This document shows, piece by piece, positions 51,945 to 64,000 of a stretch of DNA of 64,000 nucleotides. A model generated the notes under the pieces. It saw only the letters and a program-made list of their open reading frames with translations, searched no databases and had not been told where the DNA came from. The position numbers and the translations under genes were made by a program. The DNA is taken from assembly GCA_001179505.1 (NCBI GenBank), contig CDMY01000224.1, positions 1 through 64,000 of the forward strand, written 5' to 3'. Every line of letters begins with the position of its first letter. Positions within the stretch are counted from its first letter, which is position 1. The stretch is from Vitrella brassicaformis CCMP3155 (taxonomy: Eukaryota; Protista; Chromerida).

Positions 51945-52453
51945 GTACGGCGCGACCATGCTGTTTGTGTGGCGCCGTGTCGGGCCCTTATTTGTTTTTT
52001 TTGGTGTCGGTGAGTGAGTGTCGCCGTCACTGACAGCAAAGTGCATTGCCAAATCAGTAGCGGTGGTGCTAGGTTGCACTTTACTTTGTTATTGTAGGGT
52101 GGCGTGTGGTGCGCGTGGGGTGCGATGGGCTGACTGCCTTGCCCACTTGTTTGTCGCTGCCTGCTGACTGCCTCGATATCGTGCTTTCCATGTGCTGCAT
52201 GATCTGCATGACATGCTGACATGCTGATGACATTATCCGACCCTGTCTGTGGGTCGCATTCAACAATGAGACAAGTCAAGTCTTCCGCCAATGGATATCA
52301 TCACCCATATGTACACATCACCGATACACATACCTAGATACAGAAGACGAGAAACCGGCAGGCGACCGAATTGGCATACTAATCATCATCATTCGACTAA
52401 GAAATGCTCACTACATGCACCGATCCGTGCATCTACTCATCCCCCAGCCCCCG

Positions 52454-55400
52454 TCAGTCTGTGGTCACTCTGACATCACTCAGCGAGTCGGCATGGACGG
52501 CATCCATGCCACAGGCGGGGCACCGCAGCACCGCATAACGACGCACCTCAGGCACCGGCCTGCCCGCCCCCTCCAGCCGCTCCTTCTCGGCCTTGGCCCT
52601 CTTACTCGAGAGAGAGGTGGGGAGAGAGAGGTGGGGATGTGTCTGTCGGTGTATGTTCGTGTGTGTATGGCGTACGAATGTGATGACGGGAGGATGAGTA
52701 TCGTCGCGACACGCCACACAGCTGCCCCTCTCAACGGCTGCATTACCATTGCTGGTGGCCGGGGGTGGCTGCTGCTGCTGGGGGACCCCCTCGAGCAGCG
52801 CTACTTGCTTGCCTGCCTCGTGTGAGAGGTCGCGAAGTGCTTTTTGAGCATGCTTGATGTCCTGCTTGAAGGCCTCGATGGCGGCAGCAGTCTTGACCAA
52901 CGCAAACGATCCACTGTCAACCTGACGACAACCGGCAAGATGACACAGACATGTGTGCATTGTGTGGATGTGTTTGCATTTCTCTGTCAGTCACCCCCCC
53001 ACCCACCCACCCAGTGGCGGTTTGGTTGCGCATTGCAGTGTACTCGCGCTGGAGGGGCTGCAGCACCGCCTCTAGGGATCTACATTCTACGCTCACCGTC
53101 GCGATGGCCTCCTCCAACCTGCACATCCAACACACACAGGCACCAACGAAGTGCTGCGCCCTGCTGGCCAGATCAGCATAGCTGAGTTGGCTCGCTCACT
53201 CTCGTAGCGTGACATTCAGTTTGTGGTGCATCTGGCGCAGCTCCGCCTCTGTTGACGGCAGCGCCTGTTGCGAATGAACGGGCGACGGCCTGCCGGACAC
53301 ACACAGTGATAAGGTAAGCGTTCAGATGACGGCCATTCGCTTTCCGTTATCCCTCACCCAGCAGCAGGAGGCTGTGTCAAGGAGAATGCAGTGGCGCCTT
53401 GGTTGAGGAGGGGAGAGTTGTCAGGGAGAGGGAGGGGCTGCCCTGGTGGTAGTGCCTTGGCGCCCATGGCCATATCATACAGCGTGTCGAGCCGCTGGTC
53501 CTCCTCCCTGATGCGCGTCTCGAAGGCACGCACCTCAGCCGATGTCTTCAAGGCAAACAACGCGTCACGAGTCAACCTGACCGAACACAGGACACACACA
53601 CAGAATGACTAACGGCTTCATTCTCCCGTCTGTCTGTGCTGATTGCATACTCGAGGGGCACGCTACTCTTCAGTGTGTCGAATGCCTCGCTCAGCTGCTT
53701 GGTGCGCTCCTGCAGACTACAGCAATGCTGCAACAGGGCAGCGTTCTGCGACTCGAGACTGCACGCATGACATACACGCGTCGACACGATGAAGGTCCGT
53801 GTGCCCTCCTCTCTTGCTCTCACCGGTGTTTGTTCGCTATGGCGTCCCTCACATCGCTCTGCAGCTGTGCGACCACCTTGGCAGCCTGTTCCTCGGCAGC
53901 CCTCCTAGTCACAGCGCCTGTGTCCTCGCCACCATCCCCCTGGTGTCCCCCCGATGGCTCCCTCTCCCACTCTGTCCAGGCGGCTTCCATCTCGCCCCAA
54001 GTGGAATCATGGGTACCGACTGATGCACCACTGGGTCCTGATTGAGCGAGAGACTGCTGTGGTGGGACAGGGACGGGCTGGCTGATGGCACCGGCGGGCT
54101 GAATGAAGGGTAGAGAGGCCCCCCAGTGTCGTCGCCTTGTGTCTGCCTGCGGCGCCTTGAAGGTGGTGGTGGTGCCGCTCTCCTTGGGGGCTTCGTGTGT
54201 GTGGTGTGCGGCAGGGGGCTGTGGCTGGGGACTGGGCGCATGCTCCTGCACCAAACATAGCGGGGCAGGAGGCTCCTTCTCTGCTGCATCCTTCTTGTCA
54301 TGGCGATCTTCGTGTGACGGGTTCGCGGGCTCAGGTGAACAGGCCGGGCCGCCAGCAGACGAAGCAGAAAGTGACTTGGCTGACAGGGATATGCTCCTGA
54401 TAATGTCGCGGCTGACATGGCTGCCAACGCTGATCTCGTCGGTCTTTGTCTCTCCCTCCTCGCGTTCGTGAGCATCACCCCCACTGCCGTCAGGCCCACC
54501 AGAAGTACTATCATCAAGTGGGGAGGCCGGTGACGCAGAGCTTGACGACGCAGAAACCGCCTCCTGTGGGGATGCCGATGAGGCCGACGGCTCGGCCTTC
54601 CACGATGCCGCCTTCTTGCCCTTCTTCTTGCGACCTCTCGACACCAGTCGTGCAGTGGCGAGCGCCGCATGTGTCGCCTCCTCATCAAGCCTCGTCTCAT
54701 CCGCCGCGCCGCCGGCGTCAGCTCGGTCACTAACATTGTCTCTCTCGCTAGTCGTGGTCGGAATGGGGGCAGCGGCGGCCGAGTATGACGCATTGGGTGG
54801 TGCAGCTTGTGCTAGTGGGAACGAAGGAGTGGTGAGATGCCTGTCAGATCTCTGACGCTGTTTGCCGCCCGCAGCAGTGGGTGTCCGTGCTCGCGTCGCT
54901 GCCTCTTCAGCCACCAGCTCGTCAGCCACCTGTCGGGCTTCTTCCTCCCTTCTGCGTAGCCGCATTGCCTCTGCGTCAGCCCACCACGACTGGAAGCGCC
55001 TCAGCACGGGAGGGTCGGTGTTGTAGAGGAGCAACAGCACAGGCGCGACGCACACCAAGGCGACAAAGCTCCAGTACAGCACGACCCCGACGCACACCAA
55101 GGCGACAAGAAATCCCTGAGAAATGTGAAATGATCAGCGTCATTCACCTTGCGTGCATCCATCCATCCATCCCGTTGGAAGCATTCACAAAGGGTCTGTT
55201 TTGCCAACGTACGGTGGACTGTGAGGGCGCGATCGAGTTGGACGATCCCGTGTAAGTCTGCTTGGCAGTCCGGTTCTCAGAGCTGCTGGATTGATGAGAG
55301 CATCCACACAGTGCAGGAGACACGTGCTTCTGGGTGACCGCCCACCTGTTGCCTTGCAGGTAGAGGTGCCACGTGGCCCGGTCGATGGACAGAGTACTCA

Positions 55401-58400
55401 GCAGTGATGCGTACTGGATACACCGCACCAACACAAAACATCGATGCACATGGATTTGTCCGTGTCTGGTATCCCGCTGCGCGTGTGAACTCGTACCATT
55501 TCACGGGTACTGATTGTGACATCCGCGAATTCGTATACGACGTTGGTCCCGACCGCATGGTTCACCATCGCGCGCACGCAGCCCTCCTGAAATATGCCCA
55601 TCGATGAATGAGCACCGTAGCCAGTGGCTCTCCCTAACCTCTTCCACAAGCTGCTTGATTCGAGTGCTGCGCTCTTCAGTGCCCCACTCGACATACCTGG
55701 CAAAAGACAATACGATGTCTTTTGTTGCGATCTCTGTTATGTATTTGTCGCCGACCGAAAGAGCCCTTCGAAAGTGTAGCCAGCCACGACGGCTGAGACA
55801 TGGCCCGACCCCAAGCTGCGACACAAGAGCGGGAGAACACCGTGATCTACAAGGAGGGAGAGCTGCATATATGACAGACACGCGACATAGATCCATCCAT
55901 GGGTCATCTCTCAATTCTATTCATTGATGAACGTACCTGATGGCTGCTTGCTTCCGTTACAAGTGAGATCACGAATTTGATGACGTCAAGGTCCCTACTG
56001 CAACTCGCCGACTTGGGGTCGTCGGCGAGTCGCATGAGATGCCCCACAATGCCGGCACCGAAGATCTCCTCCATATACGCGTGCTGCTCTGAGCACATGT
56101 CCACACAAACAGACATCAGCAAATGAGTGTACGAATGCCTGTCTAGTTGTCGGTGTGTGTGTCTTCGTGTCTGACTGACCTTGAGCGCTCAGCGACGCAG
56201 CGTTAACAGAGACGAGGAAGTGTTGGAAAGCTGTCAGGGTGTTATGGTACAGCAAGCAATCATGAGTAAACGGAGGCGACAGGATCCTCTCGCATTCGGT
56301 GAGGAAGTCGCCCTCCCGCAGCTGCAGCTGCACCTCCCGCAGATCTTCCGCATTGGCTGCCAGGGACAAATGGCTGCGATGCGCCGTCCGTAGATCGAGC
56401 GTTGTGATGTGCCTGTGTGCCTGTGCTCTGCGGCTGACCTGAGGTGCTCCTTAGGATATTGGCTATTGCCCCCATGGCGCTGAGGATCTCTTTCACTCTG
56501 ACCCTCTCGCTGCCTTTGAGCGCCTGCACCAGCAGCGGCACGACGCCATGACTCAGGAGTTCATCGAAGCCGTCGTGATGCTCCGTAACGTTGAAGATGA
56601 GCATCAGCGTGTCGAGGGCAGGCACGATGGCGTCAACGTGCGACCCCTGTAGCTCCCGCGACGCGCCGACTGTGCGCTTCAGGAAAGCGGCCAGTCCGGG
56701 TATCACATCTATCCTGTAAACGAACGACATCGCACATGTGCATCATCGACCTGTCCATCCGTCTGTTCAGATCCTTACCGTAAGAGTGCCCGCACCCCAT
56801 CAATGCCGGTAAATGCCACGTTCAGCAGTGCTCGTATGGCCTCCAGTTGCAAGCCCGGTCGCTTGAAGTCAAGCATGAGTTCCTTCACGTCGTGCAGCTC
56901 GGCAAGCTTGGACGTGAAGCCCTTGTTGTTCTTGACGCTTGAGCGAATCTCCTTGACAGCAGCCAGATCGTCACCCACGTCGGCGGTGTGCTGTCCACGG
57001 CACTTGACTAAGTTCGTGAAGTGGGCTGACCGAAAGGGTATCGGACATGGTGGGGTCGGCTCTCAGCTTCCTGAGAGCGAGGACGACACCGGCCTGCAAG
57101 GGAAGAGCAGGCAGGTGAGGGAGGTGGTGCGATGCTGCGCTGCGCTGCGTACATGCTCCTGGATGTTCTCGTCTGGGTCGTCTGCGACTCTTCTGATGGC
57201 ATCTTCGAACGCGTCCTGCAATGCACCCACACACGTGCGGTGTTTCTGTCACGTTGGCGCCTCTCTGTTCTTCGCACCGACCTTGCTCATCCGCTGTATA
57301 ATGGCTTTGCCCGCCTCGCTTGTCTCTTCCACCATCCTGCACCACCCAAACCATGTAATATGCCGCCCCTCTGTCGTCTGCGGCCTACGTACAGCAGCCT
57401 CGCGAAGGTCAGCAAAGAAGTATCAACAGATGAAAAATCCATGGCGTCGAGCGCGCGATATACGCTCTCTATGCAACCCTGCTCCACCATGTACAACACC
57501 TGCAAGGACGCACACGACACCAATTTGTCTGCACATCCTGAGGCTGATTCTGCAAGCCGCCTCGCCCACCTGAGTGTCATTGCCGATTGGAGTGCCCAGC
57601 AACGATCGAGACGTCCACCCGAGTAACACATGAAGTTCGTCGGCCGCCGGTTTGTCCATGCTTGTGTCCCGTGCGATTCTCCTGTCGAGAGCCCTCAGCT
57701 GAGGCACCAAATTCGCAGCGATGATCTTCTCAATGACCATGGCGCCGCCCGCTGCGAAAGGTATGAGAGAAGGGGATGCAGAAAAGCAATCAGTACTTGC
57801 TTGGCGCGCACCTTCGATACAGTTCCCGATGACATGAACGGCATCTTTCACGTCGCGCTGCCATTTCTCGTCGGGGGAATTCTGGCTCATCGTTGCCAGC
57901 AGCATTGTGAGAGAGCGGAGGAGCTGCCCCTCGTCGACAAGCTGCTTGATCACGCCCGCCCGCTTCTCCTCTGGGACGAGAGCTGAGTCGAACAACACTG
58001 TCACACACACCGACACACACACACACACACACACGACACAACGATGGTGGACGCGCAGCGCAAGACTGGGAGGCCGCCTACCTGTGTATTGAAGGAGAAG
58101 ACTGAGTGCCGCCTTGGCGACTTGAGGGGCCGTGTGGCCGAGCAGCGCAACGATGGGGCGAAGACCACCAACACCAATCAGCTCATCGAAGGAGGTATGA
58201 AATGTAACCGGCACCAGCTTGTCCAGTGCGAGCACCAGCGTCGCCGCACGCACGTCGCTGCTGCTGAGAAGCTTGACAACAGCCGAGATGACATCTTTCC
58301 TGCAAAACAAAGAAACGGACAAAAAGCATCAGAAGCCATCCTGATACATCACGTGCCATACTCCTTGTCTACCGAGTCGATGGATCAAGGCCTGTGATGG

Positions 58401-58551
58401 TCTTGCTGTGCAGCTTCTGGGCGGCTTCTCGTCGAAGGCCGAAGCCAATCAGCGACTCGATGAGATCTTGCTCTACTGGGGCGTCTCCACTTGCATCCAC
58501 TGGCCTCAAAGTGAGCAGCGCGCCCGTCAGCAAGACGGGCAAGAGCTCCAT
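52454..58551 (-). CDS. Signal peptide + importin-alpha-like ARM repeats + TM + low-complexity/coiled coil + degenerate C-terminal RING
   Basis: MELLPVLLTGALLTLRPVDA signal. ARM-like GGLRPIVALLGH, EQGCIESVYRAL, QLEAIRALLNVA, HGVVPLLVQAL and GAGIVGHLMRL. TM GFLVALVCVGVVLYWSFVALVCVAPVLLLLY. CVAC...CPAC at the C-terminus. The junctions I checked are in frame, including ACC|gtacgt...ctcag|GGA into the TM exon. Confidence 0.6.
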
Positions 58552-58716
58552 GGTCCGCAGTCAACCAGATCTCCTGGCTTTATCTACATCATGGCACTTG
58601 TAGGTACGTGACCGGCCGAAGCGCTCATTCATCGCCCAAAATCAACTTAGGATATCCGAGCGAGTTTACATTCATTATTCTTCATTCACTGCTTTTGTGC
58701 TTCGTTTCTGTGCACG

Positions 58717-61189
58717 ATGTCGTCTGGCGGTGGCAAGTTGTTTGAGCAGCCGTGCCAGGGCATCCCCGACGAGCTGCTGGCCAACGTCGGCGGCACCTTC
58801 ATCAGCGACGAGATGCGGTGTTCCATCTGCTCGTGGCTCGTGTGGGTGCCCGTCATCACCGAGTGCGAACACATCTACTGCCGCTCATGCCTTGAGAGAT
58901 GGCTCGCACGGTCGGCAAGATCTGAGCAACTGAAAGGAAGTGCTCTTCAGTGCATGTGTGTCTGCCATGCGTCTGTCCCGCAGGTCTCGCTCGTGCCCGA
59001 CGTGCCAGAAGCTGCTGACGGGTGCGTCGTGTGTGCAGCCGCTGGAGCAGGCCAACCGTCTGCTGTATCGCATGATAGGCAAAATCAACCTCAAGTGCAA
59101 GTCAGTCAGTCAGATGGACGAAGAAGGACGAAAAACACGAACTCATCTCATTGGCATTGGCATGGTGTTTGCGTGTGACCTTCCTGCAGACACTACGGTC
59201 TGTCGATGGGGAAGAAAAACCACAATGGCTCTCATGTTCTATGCATTGACTTTGTTCCATCTGTCAGACGACCGTGTAGCGTTTGAGAGCGCCGCATCCA
59301 ACACGCAGACCAAGACACGGACCGGCTGCGAATGGTCCTCACACTCACGTCATCGAAACCACACATGCCTTCCTTCCCGTTCCGTGTGTGCAGGAAGGGT
59401 GCCTACAGTGACTATGCCGCACACCTCAACAAATGCGTGAGGCGGGCGGGCAATGTGTGTGCATCTCCACACCCGGCGCACGAGAGGTTACCTCGTTGGC
59501 TGGTCTGAGGTGTCCACGTGCAGGACTGTGAGTTGCTCAAGTGTGTGAATGCCGGTTGCCCCAAGGCCATCCCTCGCGGCCATTATCACTACCACATCGC
59601 CAAGTGTCCCTATCAGCGCAAGAAATGCAGATTCTGCGGCAAGTCAGTGGCACGCATACACCCCTGCCCCCTCACCCACACAAAGACACAAGGCCTCCAT
59701 TTGTCCGTTGCTGTGTCATTTGTGTCGTCAGGTTGGTCGAGGCTGTGTCGCTGGAGGCGCATGCGTCGGAGTGTCACAAGGACATGCTCATCAAACACAA
59801 AGACAAAATCCAAACACTCGAAGCCAAAATCAACAAGTCAACGAACACGAACATTAAGGACAGTGTGAATGGGCCTCTGTGTGTGTGTGACTCAGGGTTG
59901 AGGAGGTGCAGCGCGAGAGCACGTCTGCGAGTGCTGCTGCCGCCCGTCTGCCCCCGCCCCCGTCGCCCTCCCCTCAGCAGCAGGAGGGATACGTGCTCTG
60001 GGAGATCGGCGATGTCTTCACCAAAGCACAGACAAGTCTGTGTGGGGGGATGGATGGGGTGGGGAGACATCATTGCAAGACTGATATGTCTGTGCATGTG
60101 CAGCCAATTTGATCCTGTCTCCTCGGTTCCAGCTGTCCGGCCATTCCTTGTTTGCATCGCTACTCATCGAAGAGAACCCGCTGTCGCTCAAGTAAGTGAC
60201 AATTGTGCAGCCAGAGAGACGGATGATGTGGCGATGGGCTGCCTGGGGGGAATGCGTGTGTTGTGTGTGTTGTGTCCAGGGTGTCGCTGCATCATGTCTC
60301 GTACCATCAGCGGGCGGCGGCACAGGAAAACACCATGCCTGCCCGGACGCCGCGGCAGACGGTGAGGAGGGAAACAAGGAAGTGACAGGACCCCACCCCA
60401 CATCTTTGTCATGTGTGTGTGTGAAGGTACCTGTCAAGACACCTGCTCGTTCGCCAGTGAGTGCGTCGCACAGCACGCCCAACACCAAGGGCCCTGCCGA
60501 CGTGAGCAGCATCTTCTACCATCTCATCGCCGCACAGCAGTCATCCTCCACACACCACCAACACACCGGTAGGTCAGCCGGCCGCCAGTTGAGTTGAGTG
60601 TTGTATGAGTAAGTGTCGGTGTGTGTGGATGCAGTAAGTGACAACAAGCGCCAGCTGCGTGGGCTTGAGGACTCGCGCGACCACAATGACCCAATCACTT
60701 TACGCAGGCACAAGACAGCGGAAAACAACACCCATGTCTCTCTCTCCCTGTGTGCCCTGTCATGTGTGGATGATCAGAAGAAGGCCAGGTGTGGCGATGG
60801 CGGTGTGCCAGAGGACGAGGCGACGTATCGCATCAGCTTCGACATCACACTCGTACACCCGGCTGACGATCGACACAGCGTCATCAAGAAGGTGAGGGAG
60901 AGTAAAGATGACATACAGGGAGAGACATGCACATCCCTCTCTCTCTCTCTGTGTCTGTCTGTGTCAGGTTGAGTCGTTTTCGATGACGCGTTCGGTGGAG
61001 CCCTTCTGCCTTTTCGCCTTCAAAGGTGAGCCGAGAGGGGTGTCTTTCCTTTCCCTGTATGCGGCATTGTCGCTTTGTGTGCGCGGTGCAGACGAGGCCT
61101 CGTTGCTGCACTTTGTGGATGAGAGCGGTGTGCTGCGGGTGGTGCTGTCTTGCCTCCGCGTCCACCCCGGCATTCTCATCTTCTCGTGA
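58717..61189 (+). CDS. TRAF-like protein: RING, TRAF-type Zn fingers, short coiled coil, split MATH-like domain
   Basis: C3HC4 RING CSICSWLVWVPVITECEHIYCRSC...CPTC. Zn fingers CEWKGAYSDYAAHLNKC and CVNAGC...HIAKCPYQRKKCRFC. MATH-like YVLWEIGDVF...LSPRFQLSGH and later ISFDITLVHP...GVSFLSL...HFVDESGVLRV. Confidence 0.78.
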
Positions 61190-61435
61190 AAGAAGGACCG
61201 AGTGACACACACACAGACAGACAGACGGACAGACAGACAAACCGAAGGAAGACCCAAACACAGCACAGCCGATCGATCAACACACTGACAGACCGATGGA
61301 CAGACAATTTTGACCCAATCCATGTCTCAGCTCATGAATGAGTCCATGTGTGTATCGACACGTCCAGACAGACATAGAATGTCCAAAAGTGCACACACCC
61401 CCATCCATCCATCCATCCATCGATCCCATCCCGTC

Positions 61436-62980
61436 CTACACACTGATGATCCGCAGACAGTCGGGTGCCAGTGAGAGCAGGTACGAGACAGTGGCCCAGT
61501 CGCCGGCACACAGGGCCTTGATGCCCTGCAGCACCACTCCCGCCGCCAACACGCTATACCACACCGACGTGCGCACGTCCGAATCGAAACCGACCACATT
61601 CACCTGAACACACCAGCAGACAGAGGATCGCCTGCATCATATGATGTGTGTGTGAGAGGTGTCAGTGGATGTGTGTTGGCTTGCCGACCGATAGGGAGTC
61701 CTGGTCGTAGTGGACGTAATGCCACCAGCCCCAGGGAATGTACAAACTCTCACCGGCACTGTGGACACACACACCGCCCACACACACACATATAGGCAAG
61801 GGCGGTACCACAGAGCACATTCCTCTCGCGCCCCGTCCACCGGAGAGTGATTTTCAGTGGCGGTGCCGACGACGGAACGACAGACACATCTGCCGATCCG
61901 TTGTTAGCCGGCGCGTCATGAGGGACCATATTGGAGTAGAGGGCGCCGTCGAGTGGCATGCTGCTGGTGGGAGTGAGGAGGTCCGATTGAGAGTAGGGGT
62001 ACAGCCAGAAGGTCTTCTTGCCGGCGATGATGTAGTGGAATATGTGTGGGGCGGCCAGGTCCATGTGCAGCGGGGTGATGGAACCCTTAGGGGCGATCCA
62101 CAGGTACTCCACCAGAGAACCAGCAAAATGCTGAACGAAATGACAGCCAATCGACCGCGAATTCTCTTCCTCCCTCTTCATTGTGTGGCCAGTCACTCAC
62201 CGTGGGCATTGCAAGTCGCCAGTGCAGGTGTCTTCGCAGCCCCGGCAGCTGATTGAACACCTCAATGTCCTCCCGCACGTCAAGCCACCTGCCCCCGCCG
62301 CCCTCGAGGGTGCCATTCCCCTCAGAAAATGCCTGAACCAGCGTGACTGCCCGCTGGATGTCCAGTTTAGTGCTCCCATTGACACTCGAAGGCTCAGAGA
62401 AGGCGTTCAGGGTCACATTGCGGGCGGCGCCGCGCCTCCGCAAGAATGCGGGTGTCCATTTCCCGGCCGGCATGAGGGACTGTAGGCCCTTCATTCTGAC
62501 GGGGATGCAGGCACTGGGGGGAACGGATGAGGGCGGTAGGATGGTGTGAACAGGCTCCAGACGATCAAGGCAGACGCTGCACTCCTCTTCATCCGCCTCA
62601 ACCCTGGCAAGAGGGAACAGACATTCCTCCTCCCCAGCATCTTTCTCTGGCTGGAGTGCCGTCCGCACCAGATCATCCTCACTCAGTGGCCGCATAGCCG
62701 ACAGAGAGACGAGCACCACCTCCGCCCCTCTCAGCAGCTCAGCAGATCCGCATCGGCTGGCCTGCAGCAGCCGGAAGCGCCTCCCAGCCACGAGAGTGAA
62801 GTTGCCATGGGTCGCCGTGTGATGATGCAGTGCAGATGTGTTGGTGTTGGTGTGATCGCACACGTGCAGCCCTGCCGGGCGGAGGGCGAGGAGGAGGGAG
62901 GGCACCGCAACCCAGCCAATGCCGATTGACAGCCCGGCCAGCAACACGCACAAAGGACACCGCACCGCTGCTTTTGGCAT
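61436..62980 (-). CDS. JmjC (cupin-like) 2OG/Fe dioxygenase with N-terminal signal anchor and hydrophobic C-terminus
   Basis: LWIAPKGSITPLHMD (HxD), GKKTFWLYP and AGESLYIPWGWWHYVHY (distal His); N-terminal hydrophobic segment LLAGLSIGIGWVAVPSLLLAL. Confidence 0.88.
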
Positions 62981-63452
62981 GATCGGATCTGAAGGAAGGG
63001 CAGGACGCACGTGTACAGCAACTTCGTAGGGCGGAATCGGCTTCAAAAGTGTTGTTCCTTTCCGTCAGTTTCAAGGCGACCGGTCCCGAAGGGGTCTCTT
63101 GGACGCGTTCGTGGGACATCTCGCTCTAAGGCTCTTTCCTCAGGTGTGCCGTTCATCGGCCAACAGTCCGCGGCGTCTACGATGGAGGTGAGAGGAATTG
63201 GCCTCACACCTATACTGTACATGGCTGGGTCAACAACGTCCACACCGAAAGCACCTTCCACCTGCCTTCCACACGTACGGAAAGTTATCCTACAACCCTC
63301 ACAACACCTGACACTCATGTAATGCCGTCTTCTTGCATGAAGGATCACGCCATGTAGCCAACTGCATCACTGTACGTGGTCCTGGCCAATCCAATTCAAT
63401 ACTCGAAGTATAAAATGCAGGCACCGATAGATACACACCACACATCCGCAGC

Positions 63453-64000
63453 TTAGTTGTCGACGCCTCTCCGTGCCGCCCGTGTGTTGCGCTTGGCCTC
63501 GACCTGCTTCTGCCGGAACGTGTCTCACAGCCGCAGGTGGGCAGCCCTCCTCAAACCTGAGCAGGACCCAACAACACACACACATGCAGGTCATCCATCG
63601 GTTCAGAGTCACCCGTGTCTTCTATAATTCGCTCACTTCTCGAGGACGCGGTCGAGCTGGGTGTTGGTGAAGTCTCAGCCACGCGGCATCTTGCCGCCAC
63701 TGCCGGCAGCAGGGCGACGCCGCGGGCACTTGGCCGCGGGTGTCAGACACCAAATACGCTACGCTCAACATGGTCACTCGACTGGCCCTTGAACACACAG
63801 CCACACACAAAGACATATGGAGACATACATGAATGTCTTCTCCCTGTGCCTCACATACACTTACGGCAGCAGGGGGCCGTTGTGGAGGATGCCGTCGATG
63901 AACGGCTTGTTTTTCTCCCTATCCATGTGGCTGTTGGCCACCTTGGCCTTGGCCTTGTCCACCCTCTCCTGCTCCCCATCCTCCTCCTGCTGGCGCATCG
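63453..64000 (-). CDS. 3' part of a gene running off the window; reading frame interrupted
   Basis: Coding-biased exon MRQQEEDGEQERVDKAKAK...FIDGILHNGPLLP|gtaagt. Further coding-biased stretches DFTNTQLDRVLEK|FEEGC and TFRQKQVEAKRNTRAARRGVDN* are each preceded by an in-frame TGA. Confidence 0.45.

What the first reader, a model, noticed from the sequence alone, without database searches (positions are those of the whole stretch)
52454..58551. Receptor-like architecture: signal peptide, luminal ARM repeats, TM, coiled coil, RING remnant
Importin-alpha-like ARM repeats are normally cytosolic or nuclear. Here two ARM blocks follow an apparent signal peptide and precede a TM and a cytosolic coiled-coil/RING tail. 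That implies a type I membrane E3-like protein with ARM repeats in the secretory lumen or complex-plastid periplastid space, compare SELMA. It looks like an exon-shuffled chimera of expanded families.
Basis: partly seen in the sequence, partly recalled or inferred. Interest (0 to 1): 0.7.

Follow-up and report, generated by a model that had tools for sequence, protein, structure and literature searches.

The report
Membrane ARM-repeat protein with deleted RING
This is a real, already annotated but unstudied gene of the alga Vitrella brassicaformis: a single-pass membrane protein with a helical ARM-repeat domain behind a signal-peptide-like start, and a tail copied from a large ubiquitin-ligase family whose zinc-binding RING core has been deleted here, so it is probably not a ligase.

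Summary
The model equals the public protein CEL94636.1 / A0A0G4EF88 of Vitrella brassicaformis: 1478 aa, 24 exons, 23 GT-AG introns of 52-97 nt.

- **ARM repeats:** they pass Pfam's threshold.
- **Membrane segment:** one strong 31-residue hydrophobic stretch, with basic residues after it.
- **Tail:** long helices.
- **"RING remnant":** a 21-codon deletion removes four of the eight metal ligands. The duplicate 65 kb away and more than 13 relatives keep a full IAP-type RING.

That duplicate is a pseudogene (two frameshifts, one truncated exon, one stop codon). Even so, one stop against about 16 expected by chance, and exon indels mostly in threes, show that this reading frame was selected.

- **Relatives:** exons 1-18 (ARM, membrane segment, disordered region) occur only in this pair and nowhere in 1.8 billion proteins. 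Exons 20-24 (possibly also 19) belong to a coiled-coil-RING cassette found on 30 or more contigs.
- **Not supported:** current ligase activity, and periplastid or SELMA targeting.
- **Unproven:** the non-cytosolic position of the ARM domain. It rests on a signal-peptide-like start and charge bias only. No RNA reads could be obtained.

The scan noted the same layout before on other DNA of this genome (s1-242722, a five-member cluster).

The parts
58552..58716 (.). 165-bp spacer between this gene's ATG and the ATG of the divergent RING/TRAF-like neighbour (58717, + strand). It contains a block, 58552-58624, that is about 97% identical in the duplicate, and a two-codon upstream ORF.
58373..58551 (-). 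Exon 1. The only usable ATG lies here. Residues 1-20 (58492-58551) are signal-peptide-like, followed by an acidic linker.
55213..58299 (-). Exons 2-17, residues 60-741: an all-helical ARM-repeat domain, ending in a Ser/Thr-rich stalk with NSS and NRT sequons.
55023..55115 (-). Start of exon 18, residues 742-772: a 31-residue hydrophobic membrane segment. A 42-nt tandem duplication, absent from the duplicate gene copy, has lengthened it.
53824..55022 (-). Rest of exon 18: basic juxtamembrane helix (RR...RLRRR), then a low-complexity disordered region of about 350 residues. The first in-frame ATG of this exon (M791) lies after the membrane segment.
52676..53758 (-). Exons 19-23: the long-helix (coiled-coil) part of the cassette shared with the Vitrella coiled-coil-RING family. 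It ends with the first Cys pair (C1416, C1419).
52601..52675 (-). Annotated intron 23: 75 nt, in frame, no stop codon. This is the site where 63 nt encoding RING ligands 3-6 are missing compared with the duplicate and the family.
52454..52600 (-). Exon 24 plus the TGA stop: a conserved C-terminal segment with the last Cys pair (C1457, C1460). It is 96% identical to the duplicate, with Ka/Ks 0.17.

Best explanation
One 24-exon gene (public model CEL94636.1) encodes a lineage-specific single-pass membrane protein.

A signal-peptide-like start would take the roughly 700-residue ARM solenoid across the ER membrane. The hydrophobic segment 742-772 then stops transfer. That leaves a basic juxtamembrane helix, a disordered region of about 350 residues and a long-helix cassette in the cytosol.

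The cassette (exons 20-24, possibly also 19) comes from a family of coiled-coil plus IAP-type RING tails. Vitrella has attached this tail to many different front ends. The ancestor of this gene and its neighbouring duplicate had a complete RING. This copy lost the 21 codons that carry ligands 3-6, so it cannot form a cross-brace RING and is most likely not a ubiquitin ligase itself.

If it still works, the most likely mode is a RING-less membrane scaffold or decoy. Its ARM domain would bind a partner on the non-cytosolic side. Its conserved helices and C-terminal segment would pair with RING-bearing relatives.

Shown: gene structure, past selection on the reading frame, ARM repeats, membrane segment, RING-core deletion, chimeric origin. 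Inferred: signal-peptide function, topology, pairing with relatives, any current function.
For: - **Gene model:** it equals P0001, with 24 exons and all-GT-AG introns of 52-97 nt.
- **Selection on the frame:** the duplicate keeps the GT/AG dinucleotides at 42 of the 46 intron ends in the MAFFT alignment. One of the four flagged was an alignment error, so about 20 of 23 introns keep both ends. Exon indels are multiples of three in 18 of 23 cases, against 5 of 26 in introns (Fisher p 5e-5). Between the copies there is 1 in-frame stop, against 16-21 expected at the observed divergence.
- **One gene, not two:** exon 18 has no in-frame ATG before the membrane segment and lies only 97 nt after exon 17.
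- **ARM:** Pfam Arm scores 41 bits against a cut-off of 20.6.
- **Membrane segment and charge bias:**
- **RING deletion:** the duplicate's last exon encodes the Cys-rich core that is missing here. 13 of 15 aligned tails match PF13920 (best E 4.6e-12), while P0001's tail matches nothing. A profile of the family hits the cIAP, XIAP, CGRRF1, RNF25 and MGRN1 RINGs.
- **Residual constraint on the tail:** Ka/Ks is 0.26 for the coiled-coil exons and 0.17 for the last exon.
- **Closest tail relative:** P0002 has the same order (helical repeats, membrane segment, disordered region, coiled coil) with an intact RING.
Against: - No RNA evidence was obtained, so the splicing of exons 1/2, 13-18 and 23/24 rests on the public prediction and on conservation in the duplicate.
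- The signal peptide is judged from features only, and it has no basic n-region.
- Ka/Ks against the duplicate is 0.65 overall, 0.94 for ARM residues 331-700, and above 1 for the start and the membrane segment. The duplicate is a pseudogene. This is compatible with relaxed constraint or ongoing decay.
- The supposed ectodomain has only 7 Cys and 4 N-glycosylation sequons in 719 residues, a composition more like a cytosolic domain.
- P0002's public model has no signal peptide.
- Both structure models are of low confidence (pLDDT 49 and 55).
Confidence: 0.55

Rival explanations
1. The gene is decaying. After a recent segmental duplication both copies came under relaxed constraint. The duplicate collected frameshifts and a stop codon. 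This copy's disabling lesion is the RING-core deletion. The protein, if made at all, has no function.
For: - The duplicate has four or more disabling lesions: +1 nt in exon 1, -2 nt in exon 9, a truncated exon 14 with a lost acceptor, and CAG to TAG in exon 19.
- Ka/Ks is 0.65 overall and about 0.9 or more in parts of the ARM domain and the membrane segment.
- There is no relative of exons 1-18 anywhere else.
- Earlier scan notes describe several broken fusion genes with the same cassette in this genome.
Against: - This copy keeps 1478 codons open across 24 exons, where about 16 stops would be expected at this divergence under neutrality.
- The last exon and the coiled-coil exons show Ka/Ks 0.17-0.26.
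- The deletion left the frame intact, whether intron 23 is spliced or retained.
Confidence: 0.22
2. The ARM domain is cytosolic. Either the N-terminal hydrophobic stretch is not a working signal peptide (wrong start, or an uncleaved anchor in the other orientation), or the unusually long 31-residue hydrophobic segment dips into the membrane as a hairpin. In both cases the ARM domain and the tail would face the cytosol.
For: - Nearly all known ARM proteins are cytosolic or nuclear.
- The domain is poor in Cys and sequons.
- The n-region has no basic residue.
- The hydrophobic segment has 31 residues with a central YWS and a Pro.
- The relative P0002 has no annotated signal peptide.
Against: - M1 is the only ATG that can feed exon 2 in frame, and the neighbour's ATG is 165 bp away.
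- The hydrophobic core of the start is kept in the duplicate.
- The duplicate has a single 17-residue hydrophobic stretch, too short for a hairpin. The extra length here is a recent 42-nt duplication.
- The charge bias puts the C-terminal flank in the cytosol.
- ARM-like repeats do occur in the ER lumen, in SIL1.
Confidence: 0.18
3. These are two separate genes, an ARM gene and a membrane-segment/coiled-coil gene, fused only by the gene predictor.
For: - The stretch 55665-55116 (exons 14-17 and their introns) is the least conserved part in the duplicate, at 60-78% identity with large indels.
Against: - The gap is only 97 nt, with a GT donor and a CAG acceptor.
- There is no in-frame ATG before the membrane segment in exon 18, yet that segment is kept open and hydrophobic in both copies.
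- Exons 16 and 17 are 87-91% identical, with a 9-nt indel and Ka/Ks 0.48.
Confidence: 0.04
4. The protein is sent to the periplastid compartment of the complex plastid as a SELMA-like component.
For: Only the signal-peptide-like start, and the general idea of a luminal repeat domain working with a RING ligase.
Against: - The residues after the putative cleavage site are acidic (4 D/E and no K/R in 12), and position +1 is Ser. That is unlike chromerid or diatom transit peptides (ASAFind criteria, from general knowledge).
- No similarity to Der1, Cdc48, Ufd1 or Hrd1-type proteins was seen in any search.
- The RING is non-functional.
Confidence: 0.01

Closest known systems
Vitrella coiled-coil + IAP-type RING (zf-C3HC4_3) cassette family. 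The closest member is P0002 on contig C413; others include P0003-P0005 and loci L038-L067.
   Same: - Exons 20-24 (and possibly 19) align over about 330 residues at 38-48% identity, with the same conserved helix motifs and the same C-terminal CPxC segment.
- P0002 also has helical repeats, one membrane segment and a disordered region before the cassette.
   Different: - P0001 lacks the 21 residues that carry ligands 3-6 and matches no RING profile.
- Its ARM domain is not detectably related to P0002's front end.
PA-TM-RING receptor-like ligases (RNF13, GRAIL/RNF128, plant RMR) and ZNRF3/RNF43
   Same: The same logic: signal peptide, a protein-binding domain on the luminal or outer side, one membrane segment, and a cytosolic RING region (PMC4021871).
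   Different: - The outer domain is an ARM solenoid, not a PA domain.
- The tail is an IAP-type cassette with a coiled coil, not RING-H2.
- The RING is destroyed.
- There is no sequence relationship.
SIL1/Sls1, the ER-luminal nucleotide-exchange factor of BiP
   Same: An ER signal sequence followed by ARM-like repeats. This shows that such repeats can work in the secretory lumen (PMC7913895).
   Different: SIL1 is soluble and small (four repeats), with no membrane segment or tail. No sequence similarity was found here (one search lists only importin-alpha and designed ARM proteins).
Importin-alpha and other classical ARM proteins (beta-catenin, ARMC8, RAP1GDS1)
   Same: They give the best, but weak, sequence and fold matches for residues 23-741.
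   Different: The best E-value is only 3e-4, over about 42-130 residues. No IBB domain was seen. The protein is membrane-anchored with a signal-peptide-like start.
Inactive RING partners (MDMX, BARD1) and pseudo-ligases
   Same: The idea of a family member without its own ligase activity that pairs with an active relative.
   Different: Those partners keep a folded RING. Here half of the zinc ligands are gone, so any pairing would have to use the coiled coil. This is inference and was not tested.

Membership tests
Armadillo repeat proteins (Pfam PF00514, ARM-type alpha-solenoid) | Match to the Arm profile above the curated cut-off | tested here: met
   41 bits against a cut-off of 20.6, E 1.7e-10. 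Repeats at 98-128, 459-484 and one more.
Armadillo repeat proteins (Pfam PF00514, ARM-type alpha-solenoid) | Stacked three-helix repeats forming a superhelix | tested here: inconclusive
   The single-sequence model is all-helical over 26-715, but pLDDT is 49. All top Foldseek hits are ARM proteins, with TM-scores of 0.38 or less.
Importin-alpha | IBB domain plus ten ARM repeats with an NLS-binding Trp/Asn array | tested here: inconclusive
   Only weak local similarity (E 3.4e-4 to 5e-3). No IBB hit in Pfam. The binding residues were not examined.
RING finger, IAP type (PF13920 zf-C3HC4_3) | Eight metal ligands (C3HC4) in cross-brace spacing | tested here: not met
   Only C1416, C1419, C1457 and C1460 remain. 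21 residues with ligands 3-6 are absent compared with the duplicate and 13 relatives.
RING finger, IAP type (PF13920 zf-C3HC4_3) | Match to a RING profile | tested here: not met
   P0001:1380-1478 gives no family at E up to 10. 13 of 15 sequences in alignment A1 match PF13920, best E 4.6e-12.
Type I single-pass membrane protein | Cleavable N-terminal signal peptide | tested here: inconclusive
   The feature check fits: h-region of 13 residues, Pro at -4, V-x-A at -3/-1. There is no basic n-region, and no SignalP-type tool was available.
Type I single-pass membrane protein | One membrane segment with the more basic flank on the C-terminal side | tested here: met
   A single Kyte-Doolittle peak at 742-772 (2.64). 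K+R within 15 residues: 0 before, 2 after (6 within 28). Modelled helix 739-772.
PA-TM-RING receptor-like E3 ligases | Luminal protease-associated domain and cytosolic RING-H2 | tested here: not met
   No PA or RING-H2 hit in Pfam. Family definition from PMC4021871.
SELMA / periplastid-targeted proteins | Bipartite leader (signal peptide plus a transit-peptide-like, acid-poor stretch) and homology to ERAD components | tested here: not met
   The stretch after the signal-like start is acidic. No ERAD-component similarity.
Uso1/p115 head domain (the name UniProt gives the protein) | Match to the Uso1/p115 head profile | tested here: not met
   No such family among Pfam hits at E up to 1. The name comes from the database record.

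The most novel reading that the evidence does not exclude
Chromerid algae may have built a private class of receptor-like proteins by placing ARM/HEAT solenoids on the non-cytosolic side of a single membrane segment and wiring them to a cytosolic coiled-coil-RING cassette. This gene would be a RING-less member that acts as a decoy or regulator of its ligase-competent relatives. Those relatives would include P0002 and the five-gene cluster noted in s1-242722. The arrangement would resemble decoy receptors in animal signalling.
Probability: 0.2. Interest if true: 0.6.

Novelty: new variant of a known kind. Interest (0 to 1): 0.35.

Why it matters
If the topology is right, this is a rare case of an ARM solenoid working outside the cytosol. 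It would also be a concrete example of how Vitrella builds membrane-bound ubiquitin-system proteins, by attaching one coiled-coil-RING cassette to unrelated front ends.

The gene and its duplicate also show two different fates shortly after duplication. One copy lost only the catalytic core. The other keeps that core but is broken elsewhere.

The value is limited. The gene has no relatives outside this strain's genome, the ligase part is dead, and both expression and location are untested.

Tried and rejected
- **Transcript-derived protein fragments:** a search across the ARM/membrane junction (P0001:600-900) found nothing. The look-up of encoding contigs had no record.
- **Joined sequences:** I sent no self-joined spliced sequence to any search tool. 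Searches used window references exon by exon, or the stored public protein P0001. A joined CDS was built only inside local scripts, for exon mapping, Ka/Ks and the stop-codon simulation. A search for exon-exon junction words in public collections was left out for the same reason.
- **Relatives of the ARM half:** phmmer against 1.84 billion representatives, a word search and own-genome searches found only the protein itself and the duplicate.
- **More family loci:** The front ends of most cassette genes, and the cluster of s1-242722, could therefore not be inspected.
- **Literature:** the accession numbers appear in no paper. A search for Vitrella + RING + armadillo gave nothing relevant.
- **Structure models:** both were of low confidence, so fold matches are used only as weak support.
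- **Rfam:** nothing in the window.
- **Rejected readings:** a two-gene model, periplastid/SELMA targeting, a working E3, and the UniProt name 'Uso1/p115 head'.
Full report
**Identity of the locus**

The window is contig C224:1-64000 of Vitrella brassicaformis CCMP3155. A phmmer search with the first large minus-strand ORF against 1.84 billion representative proteins returned one protein only, P0001 (1478 aa, 99% identical). P0001 is CEL94636.1 / UniRef A0A0G4EF88, an 'unnamed protein product'. UniProt labels it a Uso1/p115-like head domain protein.

Mapping P0001 back onto the window gives an exact solution of 24 exons from 58551 to 52457, plus a TGA stop. There are 23 GT-AG introns of 52-97 nt. 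I found no paper that mentions the accession.

**The five claimed features**

- **Start.** Residues 1-20 have a 13-residue hydrophobic core, a proline at -4 and V-D-A before a possible cleavage site. There is no basic residue in the n-region. M1 is the only ATG that can feed exon 2 in frame. The divergent neighbour's ATG is 165 bp away. No signal-peptide predictor was available, so this stays 'signal-peptide-like'.
- **ARM repeats.** Pfam Arm scores 41 bits against a cut-off of 20.6 (E 1.7e-10), with hits in both halves. The nearest solved sequences are importin-alpha, but weakly (E 3e-4 to 5e-3). Language-model neighbours are ARM proteins such as ARMC8, RAP1GDS1/vimar and UNC45. A single-sequence AlphaFold model is helical from 26 to 715, but its mean pLDDT is only 49. 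Its Foldseek hits are designed ARM proteins, importin-alpha and beta-catenin, with TM-scores of 0.38 or less. No Uso1/p115 profile matched.
- **Membrane segment.** The only strongly hydrophobic stretch is 742-772 (Kyte-Doolittle 2.64), modelled as one helix. Within 15 residues the preceding flank has no K/R and the following flank has two; within 28 residues the following flank has six. This puts the tail in the cytosol. The segment owes its 31 residues to a 42-nt tandem duplication. The duplicate gene copy has a single 17-residue version.
- **Coiled coil.** A model built with four relatives shows helices of 64, 28, 52 and 32 residues between 1141 and 1391 (pLDDT 69-84 for the longest two). 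There is no folded domain after 1392. Weak Pfam hits go to coiled-coil families.
- **RING remnant.** See the section on the RING deletion below.

**Is it one gene, and is the frame real?**

No RNA reads were available, so I used a natural control. The gene and its neighbour lie in a 10.7-kb segment, window 52350-63081. This segment is repeated in inverted orientation at C224:118175-129351, with 78-93% DNA identity. The duplicate ('B') gives three kinds of evidence.

- **Splice sites.** In the MAFFT alignment B keeps 42 of the 46 intron-end dinucleotides. One of the four flagged, the exon 18 acceptor, was an alignment error. About 20 of 23 introns therefore keep both ends.
- **Indels.** Indels between the copies are multiples of three in 18 of 23 cases inside exons, but in 5 of 26 cases inside introns (Fisher p 5e-5).
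- **Stop codons.** At the observed divergence of 13-17%, random substitution of this coding sequence gives 16-21 in-frame stops. The lowest count in 300 trials was 7. The copies show one, in B.

The annotated frame has therefore been under selection for most of the time since the duplication.

- The gap is a 97-nt GT...CAG intron.
- Exon 18 has no in-frame ATG before the membrane segment; the first is M791. The hydrophobic stretch is nevertheless kept open in both copies.
- Exons 16-17 are 87-91% identical, with a 9-nt indel and Ka/Ks 0.48.

A two-gene reading is therefore unlikely, though RNA has not excluded it.

**State of the two copies**

B is broken:
- a +1 insertion in exon 1, leading to a stop before the donor;
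- a 2-nt deletion in exon 9;
- loss of the 5' part and the acceptor of exon 14;
- CAG to TAG in exon 19.

No protein of comparable length (813-2586 aa) encoded by B appeared in the protein databases.

Ka/Ks between the copies is 0.65 overall. By region it is 0.63-0.94 in the ARM part, 0.26 in the coiled-coil exons and 0.17 in the last exon. Because one partner is a pseudogene, these values overstate the relaxation of the window copy. They still allow weak constraint on the ARM half.

**The RING deletion**

Searching the genome with the tail found matches on many contigs. A member without an intron at this site (L026/L038, contig C527) reads CxxC, about 10 residues, then PCxxxCxCxxC, about 32 residues, then CPxC.

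B's last exon encodes the same Cys-rich core. In the window copy, 63 nt are missing at the 3' end of intron 23 and the start of the last exon. The alignment of 15 tails shows a clean 21-residue gap in P0001.

- 13 of the 15 tails match PF13920 zf-C3HC4_3 (best E 4.6e-12, 46 bits against a cut-off of 27). P0001's tail matches nothing.
- A profile of the alignment finds the RINGs of cIAP1/2, XIAP, CGRRF1, RNF25 and MGRN1.

The ancestor of the pair therefore had a complete IAP-type RING. The window copy retains only ligand pairs 1-2 and 7-8, which cannot form the cross-brace. Annotated intron 23 is 75 nt, in frame and free of stops, so the protein lacks the core whether or not the intron is removed.

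**Chimeric origin**

- Exons 1-18 (start, ARM, membrane segment, disordered region) have no relative other than B in the genome. None was found in the large protein collections.
- Matches elsewhere in the genome begin at the start of exon 20. In the alignment with P0003-P0005, similarity extends back through exon 19. This cassette occurs on at least 30 contigs.
- Annotated relatives attach the same cassette to ankyrin repeats (P0003), to other helical domains (P0004, P0005), and, in the closest one (P0002, contig C413, 48% identity in the A2 alignment), to HEAT/ARM-like helices, a membrane segment and a disordered region with an intact RING.
- P0002's public model has no signal peptide. Hydrophobic ATG-initiated ORFs lie upstream of it, but I could not test them.
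- Pfam Arm hits also lie within 1.5-3.5 kb upstream of cassette hits on C266, C831, C164 and C542.

Earlier scan notes describe the same cassette fused to Cdc48, OB folds, SRA-SET and FHA, and an ankyrin-membrane gene lying beside a cassette gene. They also describe a five-member cluster with the layout signal peptide, ARM, membrane segment, tail, RING on another contig. My searches with this gene's ARM half did not reach that cluster, so any kinship is at best distant.

**Interpretation**

The best reading is a lineage-specific single-pass membrane protein. Its ARM solenoid probably faces the ER or secretory lumen or the cell exterior. Its cytosolic tail is a RING-less derivative of a ligase cassette.

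A non-cytosolic ARM domain would be unusual but not unprecedented, since SIL1 has a signal sequence and ARM-like repeats (PMC7913895). The general layout parallels the PA-TM-RING ligases (PMC4021871).

Periplastid or SELMA targeting is not supported. The stretch after the putative cleavage site is acidic, with Ser at +1. That is unlike the leaders of plastid-directed proteins (ASAFind criteria, from general knowledge).

The main rivals are ongoing decay of a young chimera and a cytosolic ARM domain, through a non-functional signal or a hairpin-like hydrophobic segment. What the ARM domain binds is unknown.

**Limits**

- There is no RNA evidence, no dedicated signal-peptide or topology predictor, and both structure models are of low confidence.
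- No self-joined spliced sequence was sent to any search tool. Joined coding sequence was used only in local scripts.

Noticed in passing
window 52350-63081 and 63215-64000 (continuing to C224:69027) versus C224:118175-133882: A segmental duplication with an internal inversion. The 10.7-kb block that holds this gene and the divergent RING/TRAF-like gene is inverted in the second copy. The adjoining block of about 6 kb is in direct orientation (76-93% identity).
   Followed up: partly
C224:122700-129240 (loci L007, L008): The duplicate of this gene is a pseudogene: +1 nt in exon 1, -2 nt in exon 9, a truncated exon 14, and TAG in exon 19. It still encodes the complete Cys-rich RING core that the window copy has lost.
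   Followed up: yes
window 58552-58716: Only 165 bp separate the two divergent start codons. A 73-bp block next to this gene's ATG is about 97% identical in the duplicate, while the rest of the spacer has diverged. The block contains a two-codon upstream ORF (ATG ATG TAG).
   Followed up: no
window 55023-55115: A 42-nt tandem duplication inside the membrane-segment coding region (29 of 42 bases identical between the units). It lengthens the hydrophobic stretch from about 17 to 31 residues.
   Followed up: yes
G000:C413:11340-15798 (loci L027, L040, L073; protein P0002): The closest tail relative has HEAT/ARM-like helices, one membrane segment (about 505-525), a disordered region, a coiled coil and an intact RING, but no annotated signal peptide. 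A strongly hydrophobic ATG-initiated ORF lies about 280 nt upstream (C413:16078) and might be a missed first exon.
   Followed up: partly
G000: C266:129156-131307, C831:219923-223176, C164:49823-53403, C542:192826-194383: Pfam Arm hits lie 1.5-3.5 kb upstream of coiled-coil-RING cassette hits on the same strand. ARM-plus-cassette genes may therefore recur at several loci.
   Followed up: no
window 58717-60400 (+ strand): The divergent neighbour starts with a C3HC4 RING (Pfam zf-C3HC4, E 1e-7, with weak TRAF3_RING similarity), followed by Cys/His-rich ORFs. It is duplicated together with this gene.
   Followed up: partly
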